DNA of 63,809 nt, filler included, from Octopus bimaculoides (lineage: Eukaryota), in assembly GCF_001194135.2 (NCBI RefSeq). It is 5 parts of 5 records of this genome, joined end to end, with 100 filler letters (N's around TTAATTAATTAA, not from the genome) between each part and the next. Parts side by side here need not be neighbours in the genome. Positions count along the whole stretch, not along the records: positions 35,565 to 61,534 come from NC_069001.1; 4 more parts are not named here. One strand, 5' to 3'. Below are positions 35,565-59,619 of the stretch, in pieces. The position numbers and the translations under genes were made by a program. Under the pieces are notes generated by a model, which saw only the letters and a program-made list of their open reading frames with translations, ran no database searches and was not told the DNA's origin. Position 1 is the stretch's first letter. Every line of letters begins with the position of its first letter.

Positions 35565-35945
35565 CTGTTTCTGTCTATGGCTAGTGCTTTGCTATACCTA
35601 ACCGCTTCTGCTTTTATTGCTCTCTTGAGGGCAAACCACCATTTGTTATTGATGATGGCTCCTGTCAAAGCCCTCTTTACTAACGTGCTAATCCGGTCTC
35701 TGAAAACTGGTCTCGACGGGAAAGACGCGTTTAGTTTCCAGTAACCGGAGCCCTGCCTATGTGTCTTATCTAAGTCTAGCGTACACGTCACAAGTTTGTG
35801 ATCCGTGTAGCTGACTATGTGAAATTGTGGACACCCTATGCTATCTCTATCTACTCTCCTACACAGTATTCTATCTAGATACGATCTCGACGACCCGATG
35901 CGGTTTGTCCATGTCCACATTGGCGCATTCGGGTAATCGAGTCGG
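35565..35945 (-). mobile_element. Tx1/L1-type LINE, APE endonuclease C-terminal fragment
   Basis: SRSYLDRIL...YTDHKLV...GSGYWKLNAS...WWFALK matches the end of the L1/Tx1 APE domain. Confidence 0.85.
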
Positions 35946-36949
35946 TAGATAGATAGATAGATGCAGAGATAGATAGATATATGGAGTGATAGTGAGATAC
36001 ATGGGTAATTACATAGATATATATATAGACACACAGACAGGTGGGATACAGAAAGATAGATAGATAAGTAGATAGATAAGCAGATAGAAAGATCCCGTCG
36101 AAACAATGCACACAAGTGGTCTGTTTATAGAGATGAAAGGGTTGAACCGCGTATTAAGCTTAATCTCTCCTTCGAATTATCGCTGTTTGATATGGTGCAT
36201 GCTGTATCGTGTATCAGTTGTCAAAGAGATCGGAGAGCAACGTCAGATGAAGCGTTTTGCTCAAGAACACAACGCAGCACCCTAACCACTAAGCTACGCG
36301 CCCTCACAGATAGATATATGGATATATACTTTAATAATTATACATAGGTATACAGAGGGGAGAGATATCAAAGTTAGAAAGAGGAAGAAAGATTGAGATG
36401 CTTCTATCCTATAGGGATATATACATTAATATATAAGCGTACATACCTGCAGTGAACTATATCAGAAAGTTTTCTCTCTTCAAAACGACACACATTTAGT
36501 AACCTCATTTGTCAATGTTACTCAGACGTCTTACCCTGTGTTATATATATCCTGTTGGTATATCTTGTAATATATCCCGCTGTAAGCAACTGTTTTCCCA
36601 ATCGTCGCCAAATATACTTCTAAGGAAATTTGCTTCAGTTGAAGACTTAACAACACATAGATGCACTCTTAATGCAGCTTTTTAACACACACATACACTC
36701 CTATATACACACACATACGTGTGTGGGGAGATGTGTATGTATAAGGGGATATATAAACTTAGATTCATATATAGGAATACGTTCAATATATACGATATGT
36801 GTATGTGTAACATCTATAAATTTGCCTAACAAACCATAAATTTTGTTGCTATCACTTTTATATATAATCATATATCAGGTTATCTCATAAGTTCTATACG
36901 AATTCTAAATGAAGAAATCAAGTCACCAAATACTATATGTAATTGAAAT

Positions 36950-39629: not shown

Positions 39630-41299
39630 CTTTAACCTCACAATCAGAACATCACCTCTCTGCTAAAATTATTTTATATCTCCTCTTCTATATCATCACT
39701 ACCTTCAATTAACATTTTAAACCACGTAATGAATATTATATTCCCCCTACCTCACGTCATGAATCCTTCTTTCTCCATCTTTTTCTTTCTCCCTTTTTCT
39801 GTCTCACTCTTCACGTTTTCCTTTTTTTCTCCCTCCTTTTTCTTTCTCCATTCTTTCCCTTCAACTAATCACGTGAAAGAGTTACAATTATATTCCCCCT
39901 ATCTTGTGTCATGGCCGCCTCTCTCCCTTTTTTCTCCATCTCTTTTCTTATCACGTGAAAGCGTTGACGACGGGCTAAGTAACGGAATGACAAACAAATT
40001 TTTTGTTAATGTACCAACGTCGTTAAAATAATATAAAATAGTATAAACTGTTAAATTTCCGTGCGCAAGGGCCACACCTCATTTTGCTAAAACTAGTTCA
40101 AACCGGCTGCTAATATTCTAATAGACCAATATGTTTTTAAAATCCAGATATGTTTGGGTGCTAAAGTATCTTTACAACGAATTTTAGTATATGCTTTGTA
40201 TATAGATTTCTGCATTAATGAATCATTTTTCATCTTTACTGAATACAGCAACCTCTTCCATTATAAAGGAGGCCATTTGAAGTAGAAACCATCTCTCTCA
40301 TAATTCATTGGTATTCTGGTAGAAATTCTGCGTTTTAGTGCAAGTTTCTTTGAAAAGCTTCTGTGAGATAAAATATTATATCTAGCACCTATTTCTGATT
40401 CTATACACTTTATATATTCGTAGACACAGTGGTATTGTATTTCCATTGATACACACGCGCACACGTGTATTTATAGGCATTCTGCTCTCTTCCTCTCCCC
40501 TCCCATACCCATCTTCCCCCTCTCTTACATCCACCTTCCCCTTCTCCCTGCTCGTCAACACCCCCTCATAAGCTCATCCCACCACACCCCAACACACTCC
40601 TACTCTACCTTCCCACTCCACCCCATCCAATTCCTTACACCCACCACCCACCCCTACCCACATACCCCATCCTACCCACAGACCCCTACCTCTACCNNNN
40701 NNNNNNNNNNNNNNNNNNNNNNNNNNNNNNNNNNNNNNNNNNNNNNNNNNNNNNNNNNNNNNNNNNNNNNNNNNNNNNNNNNNNNNNNNNNNNNNNNNNN
40801 NNNNNNNNNNNNNNNNNNNNNNNNNNNNNNNNNNNNNNNNNNNNNNNNNNNNNNNNNNNNNNNNNNNNNNNNNNNNNNNNNNNNNNNNNNNNNNNNNNNN
40901 NNNNNNNNNNNNNNNNNNNNNNNNNNNNNNNNNNNNNNNNNNNNNNNNNNNNNNNNNNNNNNNNNNNNNNNNNNNNNNNNNNNNNNNNNNNNNNNNNNNN
41001 NNNNNNNNNNNNNNNNNNNNNNNNNNNNNNNNNNNNNNNNNNNNNNNNNNNNNNNNNNNNNNNNNNNNNNNNNNNNNNNNNNNNNNNNNNNNNNNNNNNN
41101 NNNNNNNNNNNNNNNNNNNNNNNNNNNNNNNNNNNNNNNNNNNNNNNNNNNNNNNNNNNNNNNNNNNNNNNNNNNNNNNNNNNNNNNNNNNNNNNNNNNN
41201 NNNNNNNNNNNNNNNNNNNNNNNNNNNNNNNNNNNNNNNNNNNNNNNNNNNNNNNNNNNNNNNNNNNNNNNNNNNNNNNNNNNNNNNNNNNNNNNNNNA

Positions 41300-41375
<76 letters not shown>

Positions 41376-41615
41376 CACATATATATATACATGTCTGCGT
41401 GCGTGTGTGTATCTCGTTCTCTCTCTAGATATGTATATATATATATACGTATATTTTTAGCTATATATAGTTATATTTCTATATACATATATACATGTGT
41501 GTATATAAATGCATGTATACACATTTATATATACGATCATGTATAACTATATTCGTGCATGTATATATATATATATATATCACTCTCTTCTTACATATAC
41601 ATGTGTGTATTTATA

Positions 41616-41668
<53 letters not shown>

Positions 41669-42539
41669 TCATATATACATATGTATATCTTTATATATAT
41701 ATGCATATGTGTGTGTGTGTGTGTGTGTGTGTACACGCAAACACATACAAATACAAATGTAGTGCTTTGGTGAAATTGGCTGAATGTCAAGTACACCAAG
41801 CTAATTACATCACCTTCTTCCCTGCAGGCGTCATATCCTATTGTTGTATTATAAAGCCTAAGCTTTGTGTTGTCTCATAAAGGATTTTGAGTTTCAATTC
41901 CTCCAAGATATAATGTTTGTGCGTCCGTTTTCCTTTGCAGATCTCGTAAATTAATTACGACTAATAACCATATGTGTTCTCTACCAATTATAACCCTCAC
42001 CTTTATAGCATGCATCCGCCACCAACATCACAGCCATCTTCACACATTTTCGTGTATACTATAACTTTATCGGCAGTACCATACAATACCACCGTTACAA
42101 ACAATATCAACTGATATTGACTTCAAACTCCACCACCTGCAACTACTATGACCGCATACATCTGACTGAAATTGACAAACCAACATGCTCAACACCGCTT
42201 CTACTGTCAGTATAACCGACTCTAATGCTACGAATGATGAAAATTATGACGTGGGCCTCGACATCGTATTGCAGAAACTTTCGCTTATAATGGTTTCAAA
42301 TTTTGGTATAAGACCAGCAAACGTCTGTGCTATGAAGAGGCAATTCAATCAACTCCTGTACTCAACTACTGCACATGCTATGGATCCTGTAAGAAAGAAA
42401 GGAAGATAATTTCGTCATCAACAGTATTTGGCCTTAAAATGTAAGGAGGTTACGTCGCTAAGCCTTCGTTTCACTTGCCACATATTCCACCAACTTGTCG
42501 TTTTATATTATTTGCTATTGATGGCGATTCTATCCTAAA

Positions 42540-46813: not shown

Positions 46814-47053
46814 TTAGAAAGAATATTAAGGCAGTCAAATATCTGGATGCTTGTACATTTAAAGATTTTTATTAATATGTGACATGTTTTTATAAATCAG
46901 TGCTTGCATTTATTCTTGTAGATTCTCCAGATTTAATTGGAAAATCTACAAGAATAGATGCAAGCGCTAATTTATAAAAACATGTGACATATTAATAAAA
47001 ATCTGTAAATGCACAACCATCCAGATATCTGAATACCTTATTATTTTTTCTAA
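46814..47053. repeat. 240-bp foldback palindrome (about 115-bp arms, 8-nt loop)
   Basis: Arms are reverse complements with scattered mismatches, centre 46930-46937. Confidence 0.95.
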
Positions 47054-48890: not shown

Positions 48891-50452
48891 AACGAATATA
48901 TCAAGAAAGTGAATCTTTGAGCGTTGTATATGCCATGTTTTGTTTATATATTAACCATAGTTAGAAAAGTTACACATCATGTGATCGATAACATTCTGGG
49001 TGTACATGTTACATAGGTATATGAAGTTAATTTATAAATACTGTATGTATGCTATGTTTACTGATATTAACCATTAGTGAGAAAATTATATTTCCAAACT
49101 TACCAGTCATACGTCTGGTAACATTGTAGTATATTAATGGCTGCCTATTATTATTATCACAAAACACATTTCAGACATACCTTTCAGTTACACGTTCAGC
49201 AGTAAATTAGTTTTCTTACGCAGCAATATGTGATAACAATTTGTAATATTTAATCTACTTCTTTTAGAAACATATATGTAGTTAGTTTGTTTTCATACAG
49301 CCACAGCAAAGTAACGTATTTCCTTCTAATATTAAAACAGGTTTCCAAACAGATATCATCTAATAATTTGGTTAATCTTAATAGCATTTGTATCTAACTA
49401 CCATCAACGAAATACCCAGTCATTCATCACTTTTGTTCTTCTAAAATTCGAAATTTGTTTTATACTTTCTCTTAGATCGTAAAAGCTGATACCATACCTA
49501 TCATTCTCATAACTTTCCCTTTGAACATAATTCTAAATATATATAATTATACTGGCATAAATTACTTTTGCACACTTACAGTAGAAGCATACATAAACAA
49601 CAGCAGTTAAACAAAACCTTGTAAAATAATATAAACAAAATATAACTATTATCGAGATATGTTTAATTCAAATAATTTCGAATTATAACAAACCAAAATA
49701 TTATTCTTTTATAATCAATTGTAAACCATATCTATCTTAAATATTCTTAATATAATCGTATTAAATACATCTTTAATGGTTCTTGAAAGCAGTATTAATA
49801 CGTAAGAGTTTGAAAACATGCTTAATATAGAGAAATACAAATTATCGCCTATCCATTTTGCAGCTATATACACATAGTTTCAGTAAATAAAACTCTACTC
49901 TTTCACTCTCAATCCCTCACCCACACACACACTCTCTCTATCTCTCTCTGTCTCTCGATCTATCTAAATACCTATTTATCTATCTCTTCAAATATATATA
50001 TATNNNNNNNNNNNNNNNNNNNNNNNNNNNNNNNNNNNNNNNNNNNNNNNNNNNNNNNNNNNNNNNNNNNNNNNNNNNNNNNNNNNNNNNNNNNNNNNNN
50101 NNNNNNNNNNNNNNNNNNNNNNNNNNNNNNNNNNNNNNNNNNNNNNNNNNNNNNNNNNNNNNNNNNNNNNNNNNNNNNNNNNNNNNNNNNNNNNNNNNNN
50201 NNNNNNNNNNNNNNNNNNNNNNNNNNNNNNNNNNNNNNNNNNNNNNNNNNNNNNNNNNNNNNNNNNNNNNNNNNNNNNNNNNNNNNNNNNNNNNNNNNNN
50301 NNNNNNNNNNNNNNNNNNNNNNNNNNNNNTATATTTCTATAACGTACCTTTCTAGAAAAATCTTTCTTTTCGTGATACGGGACTTGACTGCCCTTTCTAG
50401 CATGTAAGAGATCTACATAGTGGATTTCTCTCCGTGTATAGAATTTTATGCA

Positions 50453-50496
<44 letters not shown>

Positions 50497-50507
50497 GGAT
50501 GTATATA

Positions 50508-50544
<37 letters not shown>

Positions 50545-52507
50545 GTATGTAGGTGAGTAGGTACGTACGTACGTATATATTTTGGAAGGTTTGTATGTAT
50601 GCATGACTGCATATCTCCGTCCATGTGTGGACGTATGTACAAGTATTTGTGTATATAAACATACACATATACACGTACATACGTCAACACATTTATATAT
50701 ATGTAAACATTTATGTGTATTCCCTTAACGAATACGAACACACCAGTAACTCTTAATCAAGACATTCAAGTTTTAGCTTTCACTCAAAATTCTTGTGGCT
50801 ATCCTGAATAACAAACACCTAAATATTCTTAGTAAATCTACCAAAGCAGCCATGTAGCAGCTATCTACTTGTGAATGGCCTTGTGTTTACGATTTTTGTT
50901 ATTTCTGTATTCAAATTTCTGTTCAGTTGATAATCATATTATTCATCCTGTTTTCGTTTCCATTGTTGCGGTTTTTAATATTTCTTCTCGAACGAAAATA
51001 GAGAAGAAAAAAATAACAACAACAACAACAAAAAAAACGAAGAGACAGAAGCAATGAACGAAAGCGTTTGATTGATTTTTATCGCCTACCCTCAGGCATG
51101 AGATCTTTAATAAGAAACAGGAAACCTTGTGTAAAATTCTTCCATAGAGGTCTTTCGGGTTCCTCTCTTATCTTGGTTATGAAATGTACTTGTTAATGGG
51201 AAGGTGAATAAGAATATTCTCTTTTTTTTTTAAATCACGCAATTTAGCGAAATTTATTTGACGAGAAGGCCAAGGGTTGATAACATGCTAATGCAATTTG
51301 TATTTAGTTTCTCGCTGATAAAATGATAAACAGCATTTTGTGAGTTCTGAAAGAAGCGGAGATGTGTTTGAAAAAGAAGAGAAGCGAAAAAAAGAAAAAC
51401 ACGAAAAAAGCCTGAAACAAAACAGAATAGTAATAAAATAAACAAAATTACTTCTCAATGGCTGCAAGTGTGAACAATGCAGCGGAAGAAGGAATCTTTT
51501 GCAATGAAAATGTTTTTACCTTCTACAATAGGGTTGTAAAAATATACATGACACCAATTTAGCATCGAAATTTTTGGCATTGTTAATCTTGTGAACAGCG
51601 TAGTCTAATATCGAGTAGAATAATAGAACAACGTAATACAATAAGTTGCGTGAAGGGCTATGTTTGGCCATTTTTATCTGACAGCAGGGGTAGTTCTATT
51701 ACTTTGTATTGGGTTAAGTAACGAGCTGTAAATGCCTAACGAAAATCCTAAACTGGATGTCAGCTAATATTGCTTTCCGAGAATATAACAACTCAACATC
51801 TTAACCTCTATTACGTCAGCAGAATCTATCTTAAATTGCTGCCTTCCATGTTTAAAACACAAAACAAAATGAAGGAAATTATAAAATGACAAAGGATACA
51901 ATTGGTAAACTAATCCTCGGTACATGATTTCGAAACATAGGCAGCAATATGGTAACGTTTAGAAGGCCTTTGATCATAGAATTATTTATTCTGGTCTGAT
52001 CTTGAGATAAGTAAGGAAACTGAACAAACGTGGCGCATCTACGTGCTACTCAATCTGCAAGAAATAACAGTGAAAATTCAAATTACATCATAGAGTTTTG
52101 GGGAAAGGAACGGGTACATTGACTGGTATAGTTTGAAAATTGACCAAATGGTCAAGTATATGAGATTGGTAATAAACTTGTTAGCAATAGCACGAATGAT
52201 TGTTACAGAGTTTGGCAAAGCTTGTTGCAATCTTTCCCATTGATGAATCATCAACATGCCAAATCTGCAGGATTCCATAAAGAGAAACAATAAAAAAAAA
52301 GATAAATAAATTCCAGCGAATATATTCCAGTTATGCCTGTTTCAACAAGAAGAATACTCCGGTGCTACTAAAATCATAGCGACACAAACTTCTTAAAGTG
52401 AGGCAGTTTGCATGTGCAGCCTTCAGAATCGCTACAGATTTTGGTTCTTAATATCGGCATGGGTAAACAACGAATACGTTTAACGTATCAAGAAAGGCAT
52501 TGCTACC

Positions 52508-52642
52508 AAAATTCATTCACAAGGCTTTGGTCGGCCCGAGGCTATAGTAGAAGACACTTACCTGAGGTGCAAAGCAGTGGGACTGAACCCAGAACCATGT
52601 GGTTGGTAAGCAAGCTACTTACTGCACAGTCAGTCATGCACC

Positions 52643-52644
<2 letters not shown>
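52508..52644 (-). mobile_element. SINE family A, 5' half
   Basis: CAAGGCTTTGGTCGGCCCGAGGCTATAGTAGAAGACACT is an exact family A segment. Confidence 0.9.
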
Positions 52645-52690
<46 letters not shown>

Positions 52691-52744
52691 CACNNNNNNN
52701 NNNNNNNNNNNNNNNNNNNNNNNNNNNNNNNNNNNNNNNNNNNN

Positions 52745-52785
<41 letters not shown>

Positions 52786-53207
52786 TACATATATCTGCCT
52801 GTGTTTACTAATACGGGTTGGGTCTGCATGAGCGAGAGAGAGAAAAAATATAAGGGTTTTGTTTTATTTTTTTTTTAGGTTTTGAACTATATATTTAATA
52901 GCGTTTGCAAATGTACATGTGGATTGGGTGTTTGTTTGTTCGTGTATAAATGAATGAATAATGGATGAAAAAAATAGAGAACAAGTAAAACTTTAACCGC
53001 AGTGAGGTCAAATGATGACGGTTATCTATGAGAATTTATGGTCAAGGTCAGTAACATTCGAATATATGTTAGTGAGAATATTTGTGCTTTTAAAAGAATA
53101 GTCTTCATATTGTGTGCATCTGTTTGTATGAGTGTGTGTTCAATAACAATGAAGTTGCTCTTCTAAATTGATGTTCGTGTGCTGTTGGTGGTGGTGTGTG
53201 TGTGTAG

Positions 53208-54864: not shown

Positions 54865-55773
54865 TCGAGTATATATTATTAAAAAGTTCCCAGAATCATT
54901 ATGATTAATAAAAAAAAAAAATTATTTGCCGAAGTTTTGGCATCATCTCCTTCGAAATAGTCACCTTGCGAAGAAATACGCCGGTCCCGTCGTTCATACC
55001 ACTTTAGTAATTCGGCCTCGAAGTTGTTTTCAATAAACGAGTCGAGGATTTGATGCGATTCGATCTGGATCTTGACACCGGTGTTAAAACAGCGACATTT
55101 GAGCTGCATTTTCATCTTGAAGAAAATGTGCGAGTCTCCGGGTGCTAAATCTGGCAAACAGAGCAGTTGTGGAAGCGGTACCATTTAGATTTTGACGGGA
55201 AACTTACCAGTGAAGACAGCTCGCTGAAGAATCCAATTTTTTGTGCCCCGCAGAACAGTTCGCTGTCACCGAACGCCCTAATTGAAACGTTTCAAAACGT
55301 CGCAATAAAATGCTCAATTGACAGTCTGGCCCCGCGGGGTAGGATTCTCGATGCACAATACCACACTACCAGGGGTGACGCTTACGGCAGGTTTTTCCAG
55401 TTCAATCATCAATTTCCAGGGATGTTCTTCCGCTTTTGAAGCGCCTGTGCCACTCGGAACATTGAATACGACCCATTGCCCTGTCGCTGTGAGCTTTCCG
55501 AAGCACGTTCAATGTCTTTGTAGCAGACTTTCAATGTTCAACGCAAGATTTCATGTTGACGGCTTGTACCTGTCCATCACAACATTGCAGATTACACTAT
55601 ACACGTGATCCCAATGGCACAAATTCTACACATTGCGAAGTGAGCACTGCGATTCCACTCGTCATAATGCCGCATGAAGGTCACTGGCAGCCCTCACTGT
55701 GCACGCAACCGTGTGCTGGCATCTGCTAGTGTGCTACAGATCTAATCCGGGTGGGTTTTTATTCCACATCGTA
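54865..55773 (-). mobile_element. Internally deleted mariner element with both ends
   Basis: N-terminal AMGRIQCSEWHRRFKSGRTSLE joined to GIVHRES...FYCDVLKR...PDLAPGDSHIF...SQGDYFEGD; degenerate TIRs at both ends. Confidence 0.9.
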
Positions 55774-55880
55774 CATATATATGTGTGTGTGCGTGTGTGT
55801 GTATATATATCTATCTATCTATCTATCTATGGCTCTGTCTGTCTGTCTGTGTCTATCTCTCTCTCTCTCTCTCTCTCTCT

Positions 55881-55919
<39 letters not shown>

Positions 55920-56034
55920 NNNNNNNNNNNNNNNNNNNNNNNNNNNNNNNNNNNNNNNNNNNNNNNNNNNNNNNNNNNNNNNNNNNNNNNNNNNNNNNNN
56001 NNNNNNNNNNNNNNNNNNNNNNNNNNNNNNNNNN

Positions 56035-56086
<52 letters not shown>

Positions 56087-57399
56087 ATGTAATTATCAAA
56101 CTATGTATATTTGTATCTATACCTGTGTGTTTGTATGTATATTTGTGTGATTTTGTGTCAATGAGTCTGCGTATCAAGCAATGAAATATATGTTACATAA
56201 CGGAAATACACGTATATATGTATTACGTATACCATATAGTCATCTGTGCGCACACTTGGGTGTGTCTGTCAGTGAATGTGTGTACGTGTGTGTGTTTGTG
56301 TATGAGTTCGTGTGGGTTCGTGCATGTGTGTGTGTTTGTCTTTGTGTGTGTATATTTAACAACTCAAAATTGGAAATTGTTCTCACTATATTTTATAGCA
56401 TACAAGAAATTGCCAAACAATTGTTTTTTTTGCCTGATTTTCAGTTTTCCGTTAACACGTAACTATGTTAGTTTCTTATTCTTTTCGTTGTTGCAGATTT
56501 GACAAGAATCATCACCACCACCGTTGTCGTCGTCGTCGTCATCATCATCATCATCATAATCTTCATCATCATCATCACTATCATCATCACCATATTCATC
56601 ATCAACATCTTCACCATTATTATTAGTATTATTGATTGCCATATGATGTATTATTTAACAGTAACTAAAATACTGTATCCAATAAATTTATATATAAATT
56701 TATAAATACATAAATAAGTAAATGAATAAATACATCGACAAATCACAGTAAAGTCATTACTCTCTAGCTGCATTAATAATTGCAAACGGGATGCTTGGAG
56801 ATTTCATGTTTCCTAAACTCTTTTATATCTATTCTTACGCAAAAATCTATAAATTTTCATAACATCTTTTTCTGTTTAAAACAGTTACGATAATAATCTA
56901 AACAAGACATTGATTTAATTGTAAAATTATAGACTTAGCTAATATGGAGTCTTAACACGAATGTAACAAATAATTTAACGTAATGCATATAATAATAATA
57001 CAATCTATCTTAAGTATAACTCGGTAGGTGTGAAGTTAACGAAATGTATATGAAGATTTCTAGTCCAGTTAATAAATTCATTTCGATGGCTAACTCCTGA
57101 CCTCACAATAGTTCATTGCTTTTCTTAACGGTCTTCCATTGTTAATTCTCTTGCTGGCTTGTCTGCATAATTGTGAATCATATATCGATGAACTTCGAAT
57201 TTTAGTGAGAGAAGAGTTGTAATTCTTCATGTCTGTACACTGCTTGCTTTAAATATTTTCCAACTTTATTCAATCACCGTTCTTGAGATTTCTTTGCTAT
57301 AATAGAATAATAGAATATAAGCGTAATGAGAACTGGATCGAATCGATTATACATATGAAATATTTATATAATATATCAAATTATGTTATTTCCTATTGA

Positions 57400-57570: not shown

Positions 57571-58641
57571 AAGCTGTCACCTCATAGCCTTATCTTTTAT
57601 TTAATATTAATGGTTATAACAAGGTCGCAAACCAGGAGGATCGTTTACTGCTCAGGCATTCAGGTAGAATCAGCTTGTTATAAGAGAGTGTCACAAAGCT
57701 TTACTTTGGAATTTCAGATCAAATCCATCCGATAGGCTTCTCTACAGTTTTCCTTCGTCAAGTTTCTTTCACAAGGTATGGGTTGATAAGACGCTCTACA
57801 AACTACATTCTGCATTACTTACATTGTGCGATCGATCCCCAACACTCGTCCTTAAGAAACAAACTGCGTTTACAACAAGAAGTGATATAAGCATACTTAA
57901 ATATATTTTACTACGTCCTGACGGTGCGCCGAATTCGAGCTACATCTGTTTGCTAGAATTATTCAGTCAGAAATGTTCACAAAGTTAATAACTACCTCCA
58001 TTCCTAACCTTTGTTGAACAATGAAAAGAGATTCATGATTGATATGAAGAATTTCTTATTCATTCATTCTAAATTAACAAGTGTTTTAGTTTCCAGTAAC
58101 CGATTTTTTTTTTTTCAATACGTTAATTTAGAGTTCTATTGTATATATTGTCATATTCTTCAGTCTTCTGTTACATGATTCAATTTAACATTACGTCTTC
58201 TCACCTCGCAACTCTTCTCTATCTACATATTATATTTATAGGAAAGCAATGTCATTGTACAGAGAGGCCGCAAGCCTTATTTTGAGCTGAGCCGGAATGT
58301 AGAAGCCAGACGTTTCATCAATTCTATTTTTTCACCCGTTCATCATTGTCTTTCTACTTTTCTTTTTCATAACAGTTCCATAATTAAGTTTGTGTATTAG
58401 AAAATAGGCACAGCTTACTTCACAATAGATTTCGTATTATCATGATTTTCTGCAGAACGAACAAAAAGTAACGGCTTGAAAAGGGCTTTTATAATCATTA
58501 TTATTATGATGTACTTGCATAGCAAGCGACCTGATCTGAGATCGTGTGCTGGAAAGAAAACAATAGCAGCGTGGAAGGTGTTTATAAGCCATTTAACAAA
58601 CACACAAAAACCGTTAGATTCACTTCAACATTTAAATTTAA

Positions 58642-58692
58642 TTTGCCAAAATATTTTCGTCGCTTTCAGAACGCGACCTGTTCACTGACAAA
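58642..58692 (-). ncRNA. Type I hammerhead fold with G3:C8 variant core
   Basis: TTTGTCA-GTGAACA-G-GTCGC(GTTCTGAAA)GCGAC-GAAA-ATAT-TT|TGGCAAA. Confidence 0.6.
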
Positions 58693-58715
58693 ACTCCGTG
58701 CTGCACCTCGGAGTT

Positions 58716-58764
58716 TTGTCAGTGAACAGGTCGCGATCTCAAAGCGACGAAAATATTTTGGCAG
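58716..58764 (+). ncRNA. Type I hammerhead fold with G3:C8 variant core
   Basis: TTGTCA-GTGAACA-G-GTCGC(GATCTCAAA)GCGAC-GAAA-ATAT-TT|TGGCAG; predicted cut after 58758. Confidence 0.6.
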
Positions 58765-59021
58765 CTTAAATTTAAATGTTGAATTGAATCTAACGGGGTT
58801 TTTTTTAATGTTTTATAAATGGCTTATAAACACCTTCCACGCTGCAATTATTATTATTGTTATTATATTATACTGTGATAAATTTCACAAGGTTTCCGGA
58901 AGTCAGCCATAACTCTACTACAATACTAAGGAGACAGAAAAAACTATCGATCAGTCATGGCTTAAGTGGTGATTACACTATTTGTCAGCAGTTTTGATTT
59001 TATAACGCCCGCATATTAACC

Positions 59022-59212
59022 AGGGCAGATATTGCCGGGCAGAATGCTTAGCGGCATTTCGTCTATCGTTAAGTTCTGTGTTCAAATTCCGCCGAGGTCG
59101 ACTTTTCCTTTCATCATTTCAGGGTCCATAAAATATGTACCAGTTGGACACTTGGGTTAATGTAATCGGCTTCACCCTTCCCCGAATGTACAGGCCTTAT
59201 GCCCAAAATTGG
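59022..59212 (+). mobile_element. SINE family B, near-full copy
   Basis: B-box-like GTTCAAATTCC then GCCGAGGTCGACTTTTCCTTTCATC. Confidence 0.8.
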
Positions 59213-59619
59213 ACGGCATGTCAGCCATAACTCTATTACAATACTAAGGAGGGAGAAATGAATCTAAGTCGCTTCACGAAAGATTTACAGATTCATCTCT
59301 CCCTCGAAGTTATCATTAGCAGAGTGTAGAATGGTAGGAATTTTATTGACAACATTGCTTATTATTTAGAGAAGAGAGGCATAACCTGAAAGCAAACTAT
59401 GAATTTATCTCTTTGCACTAGGCATACAGATTTCTTTCTCTCTGGAGATAAAATGACTGCAAGGGTTCATGTAATATTGCTTCTAGAAATAAATTAAATG
59501 TTTACACTGGGCATAAAGGTTAATTTCTTTCCTGACGTTGTTATGGCCAAGAGTTAAAACGTTAGCAGCGTTTTTTTTTTATAACTTACATTATTATTTC
59601 AACAGCAACACGTCAGTGT

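What the first reader, a model, noticed from the sequence alone, without database searches (positions are those of the whole stretch)
58566..58845. Palindromic element with two hammerhead folds whose core is the compensatory G3:C8 variant (GUGAACA)
Seen: each arm, read outward from the centre, folds in exact type I HHR register. It has a 6-7-bp helix I, the core GTGAACA, one extra G, a 5-bp helix II GTCGC/GCGAC, GAAA, a palindromic helix III AAATATTT and a UUU triplet. Known: C3 and G8 form a Watson-Crick pair in the active hammerhead and the double swap rescues single mutants. Minimal HHRs with palindromic helix III act as dimers in Penelope-like elements. Inference: both positions have switched while all other core positions are kept, which points to selection for function. 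A CUGANGA pattern search would miss this family.
Basis: partly seen in the sequence, partly recalled or inferred. Interest (0 to 1): 0.88.

Follow-up and report, generated by a model that had tools for sequence, protein, structure and literature searches.

The report
Retrotransposon relic with variant hammerhead ribozyme
A 340-bp palindromic insert in a repeat-rich animal-like genome looks like two back-to-back fragments of a Penelope-like retrotransposon, each carrying a minimal hammerhead ribozyme in which a conserved core base pair (C3-G8) is flipped to G3-C8, a flip I found reported only for engineered ribozymes.

Summary
A near-perfect palindrome (58566-58845, centre 58703|58704) carries one hammerhead-like motif per arm, each reading outward. 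The motif has a 6-7 bp helix I, core GUGAACA, one unpaired G, a 5-bp helix II, GAA, a loopless palindromic helix III and U17. It is not chance at window scale: about 1e-3 matches are expected in the piece. Rfam does not detect it. The insert is bracketed by an 11-bp direct repeat (ATTATTATTAT). It has a 58-nt extension on one side only, and both 3' ends point outward, which fits the known inverted, 5'-truncated PLE insertion. The papers I could search report U3-A8 as the only natural 3-8 covariation. G3-C8 appears only as an engineered, partly active double mutant. No second copy could be reached, so selection on G3-C8 is inferred, not shown. This locus is probably inert, because each transcript holds one ribozyme locked in a -190 kcal/mol hairpin. 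Verdict: probably a new core variant of a known ribozyme kind, of moderate interest.

The parts
58497..58507 (+). Left copy of the 11-bp direct repeat ATTATTATTAT (candidate target-site duplication or microsatellite target)
   Evidence: There are only 4 exact occurrences in the piece. Two of them, in the same orientation, bracket the insert (sequence).
58508..58565 (-). One-sided 58-nt extension of the left arm beyond the end of the palindrome (candidate PLE 'tail')
   Evidence: The arm alignment shows the left arm running on past ...CCACGCTGC before it reaches the ATT repeat, while the right arm abuts the repeat directly. A tail at one end only is a described PLE insertion signature, normally 30-40 bp.
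58566..58703 (-). Left arm: 5'-truncated element copy read on the - strand, 3' end outward
   Evidence: Inverted repeat; blastn gives 89% identity to the right arm; alignment.
58704..58846 (+). Right arm: 5'-truncated element copy read on the + strand, 3' end outward
   Evidence: The arm ends 87-88 nt after the predicted cleavage site.
58716..58764 (+). Right-arm minimal type I hammerhead motif. Helix I 58716-21/58759-64; G3 58722; U4 G5 A6 58723-25; A7 58726; C8 58727; A9 58728; unpaired G 58729; helix II 58730-34/58744-48; loop 2 58735-43; G12 A13 A14 58749-51; helix III AAUAUU 58752-57; U17 58758; predicted cut 58758|58759
   Evidence: Sequence, descriptor hit, and a single-arm minimum-energy fold that forms helices I and II as required.
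58642..58691 (-). Left-arm minimal type I hammerhead motif, mirror image of the right one. Core 58685-58679; unpaired G 58678; helix II 58677-73/58663-59; GAA 58658-56; helix III 58655-50; U17 58649; predicted cut 58649|58648; 7-bp helix I 58692-86/58648-42
58847..58857 (+). Right copy of the 11-bp direct repeat ATTATTATTAT

Best explanation
The element (58508-58846) is one old, dead-on-arrival insertion made by a Penelope-like retroelement (PLE) or a non-autonomous derivative. Two heavily 5'-truncated copies of the element's 3'-terminal (pseudo-LTR) region are joined head-to-head, with both 3' ends against the target DNA. This is the expected product when both cleaved target strands prime reverse transcription of element RNA and the two short cDNAs meet in the middle (inferred). 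Each arm carries the element's minimal type I hammerhead. That ribozyme has no helix III hairpin, so it can act only when two sense copies pair through the palindrome AAUAUU, as in tandem PLE transcripts. In this lineage the core pair C3-G8 has been replaced by G3-C8 and every other conserved core nucleotide is kept. I read that as a compensated, selected change in the source element. By analogy with engineered C3G/G8C mutants it probably still allows low-level cleavage after U17. The locus in this window is probably not an active ribozyme, because any transcript would fold into a long perfect hairpin. Shown here: the sequence anatomy, the non-chance match and the insertion geometry. Inferred: the PLE origin, the double-priming mechanism, selection on G3-C8 and any catalytic activity.
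For: 1. The motif is present in both arms and is not chance at window scale.
2. It has PLE min-HHR hallmarks that played no part in its detection. These are an unpaired nucleotide between A9 and 10.1 (G 58729), G10.1-C11.1 (58730/58748), a palindromic loopless helix III, a helix II longer than the canonical 4 bp, and two motifs on opposite strands about 110 bp apart. The paper describes 'dual min-HHRs ~100-700 bp apart in opposite strands' and says most motifs are solitary remnants of truncated PLEs (PMC4209133).
3. PLE insertions are described as highly 5'-truncated, often with an adjacent inverted 5'-truncated copy forming inverted repeats, a 30-40 bp tail at one end only, and a bias toward microsatellite targets (PMC8557442). 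Here an 11-bp ATTATTATTAT repeat brackets the insert and only the left side has an extension.
4. A purified PLE protein cleaves and extends both target strands, and it starts reverse transcription 85-92 nt downstream of the hammerhead cut site (111-118 bp into the ORF, with the cut site 26 bp into the ORF). Here the distance from cut site to arm end is 87-88 nt (PMC11167929).
5. The 3-8 pair is known to covary in nature as U3-A8 (PMC3088659; PMC4209133). The engineered C3G/G8C double mutant partly restores cleavage, including in a PLE hammerhead.
6. The differences between the arms lie in the central loop, in loop 2 and in helix I, where G-U becomes A-U and pairing is kept. None lies in the core, helix II or helix III.
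Against: - No second copy was found in the piece or in any collection I could reach. Family-level conservation and covariation, the real test of selection, are therefore missing.
- No reverse transcriptase or GIY-YIG reading frame, and no Pfam domain of any kind, lies in the 26-kb piece.
- The one-sided extension is 58 nt, longer than the 30-40 bp described for PLE tails.
- Rfam hammerhead models give no hit.
- The intermolecular helix III is only six A-U pairs. Cofold predictions prefer other dimers, and the single-arm fold is no more stable than shuffled sequence (z about -1.2).
- The depletion of arm differences at constrained sites is not significant (p about 0.06-0.11).
- If the first-stage scan covered very many windows, a chance match somewhere is not negligible: about 1.7e-8 per base per strand.
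Confidence: 0.6

Rival explanations
1. It is a genuine PLE or retrozyme hammerhead relic, but G3 and C8 are decay mutations in a catalytically dead motif that kept transposing, because cleavage is not needed for insertion.
For: Hammerhead catalytic mutants do not affect PLE insertion in vitro, and no RNA-seq reads end at the cut site (PMC11167929). Naiad PLEs proliferate without any canonical hammerhead. There is no family evidence here.
Against: The other nine conserved core nucleotides and all three helices are intact in both arms. If two random hits fell among the 11 core positions, the chance that they were exactly the 3/8 pair and complementary is about 1/165 (my calculation). The pairing-restoring double change is the one combination known to retain activity.
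Confidence: 0.18
2. It is an unrelated palindromic repeat (a MITE or foldback DNA transposon, or a local inverted duplication) whose arm resembles a hammerhead by chance.
For: The shape is palindromic with flanking direct repeats. A second, unrelated 240-bp palindrome lies in the same piece (46814-47053). Chance matches are expected at genome scale. There is no Rfam hit and no PLE reading frame nearby.
Against: About 1e-3 matches are expected in the piece. Several PLE-specific features that the descriptor does not require are also present: G10.1-C11.1, opposite-strand pairing, outward orientation and the distance from cut site to arm end. The inverted repeat does not reach the left direct repeat but stops 58 nt short of it, which is unlike a terminal inverted repeat abutting its target-site duplication.
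Confidence: 0.12
3. Whatever its origin, the unit that matters today is the 290-nt perfect hairpin, acting as a source of small RNAs (endo-siRNA, piRNA or miRNA-like). The hammerhead motif would then be irrelevant.
For: The hairpin is -190 kcal/mol with z = -29. The only Rfam similarities are generic matches to miRNA-precursor hairpins, all far below their gathering scores.
Against: There are no expression data. The Rfam matches simply reflect any long hairpin. This reading does not explain the hammerhead-specific junction sequences. It is compatible with the best explanation rather than an alternative origin.
Confidence: 0.07

Closest known systems
Minimal hammerhead ribozymes (min-HHR) of Penelope-like elements (Cervera & de la Pena 2014, PMC4209133; Lunse, Weinberg & Breaker 2017, cited in PMC6765202)
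   Same: Both have type I topology and no helix III hairpin, only a short palindrome, so both depend on dimers. Both have an unpaired nucleotide between A9 and 10.1, G10.1-C11.1 and a helix II longer than 4 bp. Both occur as solitary remnants and as pairs on opposite strands. A 3-8 core covariation (U3-A8) is already documented in this family.
   Different: The core pair here is G3-C8, not C3-G8 or U3-A8. No associated RT/GIY-YIG reading frame or pseudo-LTR tandem is present in the window. No multi-copy family could be examined, and cleavage was not tested.
Inverted, 5'-truncated PLE insertion structures with a one-sided 'tail' (Craig et al. 2021, PMC8557442; PAc in vitro system, PMC11167929)
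   Same: The two arms are inverted with their 3' ends outward. Only one side has an extension. The target is an (ATT)n-like simple repeat. The distance from cut site to 3' end (87-88 nt) is close to that implied for PAc (85-92 nt).
   Different: Both copies are truncated to about 140-200 nt, so the whole insertion is just a palindrome. The extension is 58 nt, not 30-40 nt. The PLE clade is unknown.
Engineered C3G/G8C double-mutant hammerheads (Martick & Scott 2006 as cited in PMC11167929; the PAc hammerhead in PMC11167929; a G3-C8 variant mentioned in PMC3884650)
   Same: The core base-pair swap is the same. The double mutant partly restores the cleavage lost in either single mutant, including in a PLE hammerhead.
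   Different: Those are laboratory constructs. This is a genomic sequence. The papers I could search report only U3-A8 as a natural covariation.
Metazoan non-LTR retrozymes (Cervera & de la Pena 2020, PMC7229834)
   Same: Both are short (170-400 nt), AT-rich, highly self-paired non-coding elements with type I hammerheads, and both are thought to derive from PLE pseudo-LTRs (bioRxiv 10.64898/2026.07.22.740005).
   Different: Retrozymes are direct tandem repeats with one sense ribozyme per unit, so monomers can be excised and circularised. Here the two motifs lie on opposite strands, there is no tandem repeat, and a transcript has only one cut site.

Membership tests
Hammerhead ribozyme, type I | Three-way junction in the order helix I strand, 7-nt core strand, helix II hairpin, GAA, helix III, H17, helix I strand | tested here: met
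   Helices I (6-7 bp) and II (5 bp) are in register in both arms. Helix III exists only as a loopless 6-nt palindrome, so it must form between two molecules.
Hammerhead ribozyme, type I | Conserved core nucleotides U4 G5 A6 A9 G12 A13 A14 A15.1 U16.1, and H17 not G | tested here: met
   All are present in both arms. On the + strand they are at 58723-25, 58728, 58749-52, 58757 and 58758 (U17).
Hammerhead ribozyme, type I | C at position 3 and G at position 8 | tested here: not met
   G3 is at 58722 and C8 at 58727. The identities are swapped and Watson-Crick pairing is kept. U3-A8 is an accepted natural exception.
Hammerhead ribozyme, type I | Match to the curated covariance models (Rfam hammerhead families) | tested here: not met
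   There is no hammerhead hit at the gathering threshold over the piece, nor at E<=10 on 58400-59000.
Hammerhead ribozyme, type I | Site-specific self-cleavage leaving 2',3'-cyclic phosphate and 5'-OH ends | not testable with these tools
   This needs an in vitro cleavage assay or RNA end mapping.
PLE minimal hammerhead (min-HHR) | Unpaired nucleotide between A9 and 10.1 | tested here: met
   G at 58729 on the + strand and at 58678 on the - strand. The feature is defined.
PLE minimal hammerhead (min-HHR) | G10.1-C11.1 closing pair and an enlarged helix II | tested here: met
   G 58730 pairs with C 58748. Helix II is 5 bp, against the canonical 4 bp. The published families have 6-8 bp.
PLE minimal hammerhead (min-HHR) | Helix III absent or minimal, with palindromic 15.2-16.2 | tested here: met
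   AAUAUU at 58752-58757 is a perfect palindrome with no loop.
PLE minimal hammerhead (min-HHR) | Lies in the pseudo-LTR of an element encoding RT and a GIY-YIG endonuclease | tested here: inconclusive
   No Pfam domain was found in 20 stop-free segments of the piece. However, the literature says most min-HHRs are solitary remnants of truncated PLEs.
PLE minimal hammerhead (min-HHR) | Belongs to a multi-copy consensus family with compensatory changes in the helices | not testable with these tools
   The source genome is not in any searchable collection. Protein-route and DNA-pattern scans found nothing related.
PLE insertion anatomy | 5'-truncated copy with an adjacent inverted 5'-truncated copy | tested here: met
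   The head-to-head arms have no spacer, and the sense strands read outward. The feature is described.
PLE insertion anatomy | 30-40 bp tail at one end only, and a microsatellite target | tested here: inconclusive
   There is a one-sided extension, but it is 58 nt. The flanks are the 11-bp direct repeat ATTATTATTAT.
Non-LTR retrozyme | Direct tandem repeats of 170-400 bp, each with a sense hammerhead | tested here: not met
   No direct repeat of the arm exists. The only other copy is inverted.
MITE or foldback DNA transposon | Terminal inverted repeats directly abutting a fixed-length target-site duplication on both sides | tested here: not met
   The right arm abuts the 11-bp repeat, but the left arm ends 58 nt away from it.

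The most novel reading that the evidence does not exclude
G3-C8 hammerheads are the normal, functional ribozyme of a whole PLE or retrozyme lineage in this animal group. They may include PLE clades now described as lacking canonical hammerheads, such as the Naiads. Every CUGANGA-anchored descriptor and covariance model has overlooked them. This would be the second natural covariation of the catalytic 3-8 pair.
Probability: 0.2. Interest if true: 0.7.

Novelty: new variant of a known kind. Interest (0 to 1): 0.5.

Why it matters
The C3-G8 pair links the two core strands in the active hammerhead fold. The papers I could search report it changing in nature only to U3-A8. A retroelement family that uses G3-C8 would give natural support to the partial rescue seen in engineered mutants. 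It would show that motif searches anchored on CUGANGA under-count hammerheads in animal genomes. It would also offer a natural test of why C-G is so strongly preferred over G-C at this position, for example through avoidance of G3-C17 mispairing; this element has U17. If it proves to be a single decayed relic, it is just one more dead retrotransposon fragment.

Tried and rejected
1. Rfam, at gathering threshold over the piece and at E<=10 around the element, gave no hammerhead. The only hits were generic hairpin similarities to miRNA precursors, far below threshold.
2. I looked for other copies by translating the 122-aa open frame that spans the palindrome and searching the 5.8-billion-protein collection, which includes Logan assemblies. 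Nothing was found.
3. The exact-pattern scan GTCANTGANNANGTCGC-N(5-12)-GCGACGAAA found nothing in viral contigs. It found 2 hits in metagenome contigs and 3 in prokaryotic genomes. The three I read lie in G+C-rich stretches with no wider resemblance to the arm, and all five loci are 56-68% G+C, so I treat them as chance.
4. I tried to reach the source genome through a LINE-like fragment at 35567-36124. This returned only two short contigs, one Logan contig of 1.5 kb at 53% protein identity and one ENA contig of 0.56 kb at 84% DNA identity.
5. Low-stringency blastn of the arm and the tail against the piece found no further copies.
6. I considered another register that would give a canonical core: CUGACAA at 58687 followed by the central hairpin as helix II. 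I rejected it because G8 is A and 8 nt separate that helix from the nearest GAA (by inspection).
7. Cofolding two sense copies predicts domain-swapped duplexes, not the helix III dimer, so it is uninformative about dimer activity.
8. A test for depletion of arm differences at constrained sites was not significant.
9. The supplements of the two key PLE papers are not held, and Lunse et al. 2017 is not held. I therefore could not check whether G3-C8 variants are listed there.
10. My impression that the piece is cephalopod or mollusc DNA rests on memory of a SINE-like sequence. I could not verify it and did not use it.

Full report
**Setting.** The usable piece (35565-61534) is about 35% G+C. It is full of microsatellites and assembly gaps and has no tRNA genes. 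None of the 20 stop-free segments I scanned against Pfam matched a domain. It reads as repeat-rich eukaryotic, probably animal, non-coding DNA. I could not establish the organism.

A near-perfect palindrome is centred at 58703|58704. The inner arms 58595-58703 / 58704-58812 and the outer arms 58559-58610 / 58801-58852 are each 87% complementary. As RNA the whole element folds into a single hairpin of -190 kcal/mol (z = -29).

Read outward from the centre, each arm contains the following, given for the + strand arm:
- helix I: UUGUCA 58716-21 with UGGCAG 58759-64
- core: GUGAACA 58722-28
- one unpaired G: 58729
- helix II: GUCGC 58730-34 with GCGAC 58744-48, around a 9-nt loop
- G12 A13 A14: 58749-51
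- helix III: the palindrome AAUAUU 58752-57
- U17: 58758

The mirror motif lies on the - strand with its core at 58685-58679. There helix I is 7 bp, because G1.6 and C1.7 are both A.

In register helix III is six nucleotides with no loop, so it can only form between two molecules.

**More than chance.** I wrote a deliberately permissive descriptor: any Watson-Crick 3-8 pair, 0-1 extra base, helix II >=4 bp, helix III >=3 bp with a 0-30 nt loop, helix I >=5 bp. It finds only these two arms in the piece. It finds nothing in 4 Mb of second-order Markov sequence and one match in 60 Mb of composition-matched random sequence. That is about 1e-3 expected matches in the piece. At genome scale tens to hundreds of chance matches would be expected, so the look-elsewhere caveat is real. 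The two arms are copies of each other and count once. Rfam's hammerhead models do not see the motif even at E<=10. A single arm adopts the helix I plus helix II fold as its minimum-energy structure, but it is no more stable than shuffled sequence (z about -1.2).

**What it is.** The decisive comparison is with the minimal hammerheads of Penelope-like elements (PLEs). Cervera & de la Pena (PMC4209133) list features that emerged from their hits without being part of their descriptor:
- a conserved unpaired nucleotide between A9 and 10.1
- a highly conserved G10.1-C11.1 pair
- an enlarged helix II
- palindromic 15.2-16.2 with little or no helix III, so the ribozyme works only as a dimer

They also report that most motifs are solitary remnants of truncated PLEs, that some occur as pairs 100-700 bp apart on opposite strands, and that one family shows the core covariation U3-A8. 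Every one of these architectural features is present here. The two predicted cut sites are about 110 bp apart on opposite strands.

**Insertion anatomy.** PLE insertions are strongly 5'-truncated. They often have an inverted 5'-truncated copy next to them, a 30-40 bp 'tail' at one end only, and a bias toward microsatellite targets (PMC8557442). Here the exact 11-mer ATTATTATTAT occurs four times in the piece. Two of those copies, in the same orientation, bracket the element at 58497-58507 and 58847-58857. The right arm abuts its copy directly. The left arm runs on for 58 nt (58508-58565) before reaching the other copy.

The sense strands of both arms point outward. That geometry is expected if both cleaved target strands prime cDNA synthesis from the 3' region of element RNA. 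A purified PLE protein does cleave and extend both strands, and it initiates reverse transcription internally, 85-92 nt downstream of the hammerhead cut site (PMC11167929). Here the cut site lies 87-88 nt from the arm end. A DNA-transposon (MITE) reading fits poorly, because the left inverted repeat does not reach the flanking direct repeat.

**The G3-C8 core.** Full-text searches found natural covariation at 3-8 only as U3-A8 (PMC3088659; PMC4209133). G3-C8 appears only as an engineered double mutant. It partly restores the activity lost in either single mutant, including in a PLE hammerhead (PMC11167929; a G3-C8 variant is also mentioned in PMC3884650). I could not read Lunse et al. 2017 or the supplements of the PLE papers, so a prior listing cannot be excluded.

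Both arms share G3-C8, so it was already in the template RNA. If two of the 11 conserved core positions had mutated at random, the chance that they were exactly 3 and 8 and complementary is about 1/165 (my calculation). This favours a compensated, selected change over simple decay. It remains an argument from one locus.

Differences between the arms fall in the central loop, in loop 2 (two differences) and in the helix I 3' strand, where G-U becomes A-U in the left arm. None falls in the core, helix II or helix III. The depletion at constrained sites is not significant (p about 0.06-0.11).

**How it most likely works.** In the source element, tandem or multimeric transcripts would bring two sense motifs together. 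Their AAUAUU segments would pair to build the shared helix III, and each core, closed by G3-C8 in place of C3-G8, would cleave after U17. Cleavage would probably be slow and might need help from protein, as reported for PLE hammerheads. U17 rather than C17 would avoid a G3-C17 mispairing; this is inferred by analogy with the C3-G17 trap discussed in PMC3884650.

The locus in this window is almost certainly inert as a ribozyme. A transcript of either strand carries one sense motif and its complete antisense, locked in the long hairpin. At most it could yield small RNAs.

**What is missing.** No other copy exists in the piece. The source genome is not in any collection I could search:
- the protein route through the spanning open frame found nothing
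- pattern scans of viral, metagenomic and prokaryotic collections found nothing related
- a LINE-like fragment led only to two short unrelated contigs

Family conservation, helix covariation, linkage to an RT/GIY-YIG reading frame, and catalysis therefore remain untested.

**Verdict.** The hammerhead and PLE interpretation is well supported by independent hallmarks and by the insertion anatomy. The claim of selection for a functional G3-C8 core is plausible but unproven. I rate it a new variant of a known kind, of moderate interest (0.5). The interest would rise if a genome-wide family with G3-C8 is found.

Noticed in passing
window 58902-59258: A roughly 280-bp insert (58941-59219) is bracketed by a 39-nt direct repeat (58902-58940 / 59220-59258, 92% identical). 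By eye it has tRNA-type box A/B-like motifs and looks like a SINE with an unusually long target-site duplication. ARAGORN calls no tRNA there.
   Followed up: partly
window 46814-47053: A second, unrelated palindrome has 116-nt arms, 89% complementarity and an 8-nt spacer. It lies directly next to a (CA/GT)n microsatellite. My descriptor finds no hammerhead-like motif in it. It could be a MITE or another inverted retro-insertion.
   Followed up: partly
window 35567-36124 (- strand): A LINE-like reading-frame fragment is cut off by the edge of the piece. Its nearest relatives are a Logan contig (SRR11869391, 53% protein identity) and an ENA metagenome scaffold (ERZ23491053). The ENA scaffold is 84% identical in DNA to 35751-35947 and has a weak Exo_endo_phos hit. 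Pfam gives no hit for the window fragment itself.
   Followed up: partly
window 58508-58565: The one-sided extension shares two 8-mers (CAGGTCGC and CGATCTCA) with the helix II region of the hammerhead arm, but in swapped order. About 0.1 shared 8-mers would be expected by chance. I have no explanation.
   Followed up: no
window 54882-55184 (- strand): A 101-aa open frame contains ...DLAPGDSHIFFKMK...GDYFEGD. From memory this resembles the C-terminus of a mariner/Tc1 transposase. Pfam gave no hit at E<=0.01, so the resemblance is unverified.
   Followed up: partly
window 40600-41750, 49960-50580, 52640-52800, 55880-56100: There are long (TA)n, (CA)n and (CT)n microsatellite blocks with embedded runs of N. 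They match one another as inverted or direct repeats. They are probably hard-to-assemble regions and not real features.
   Followed up: no
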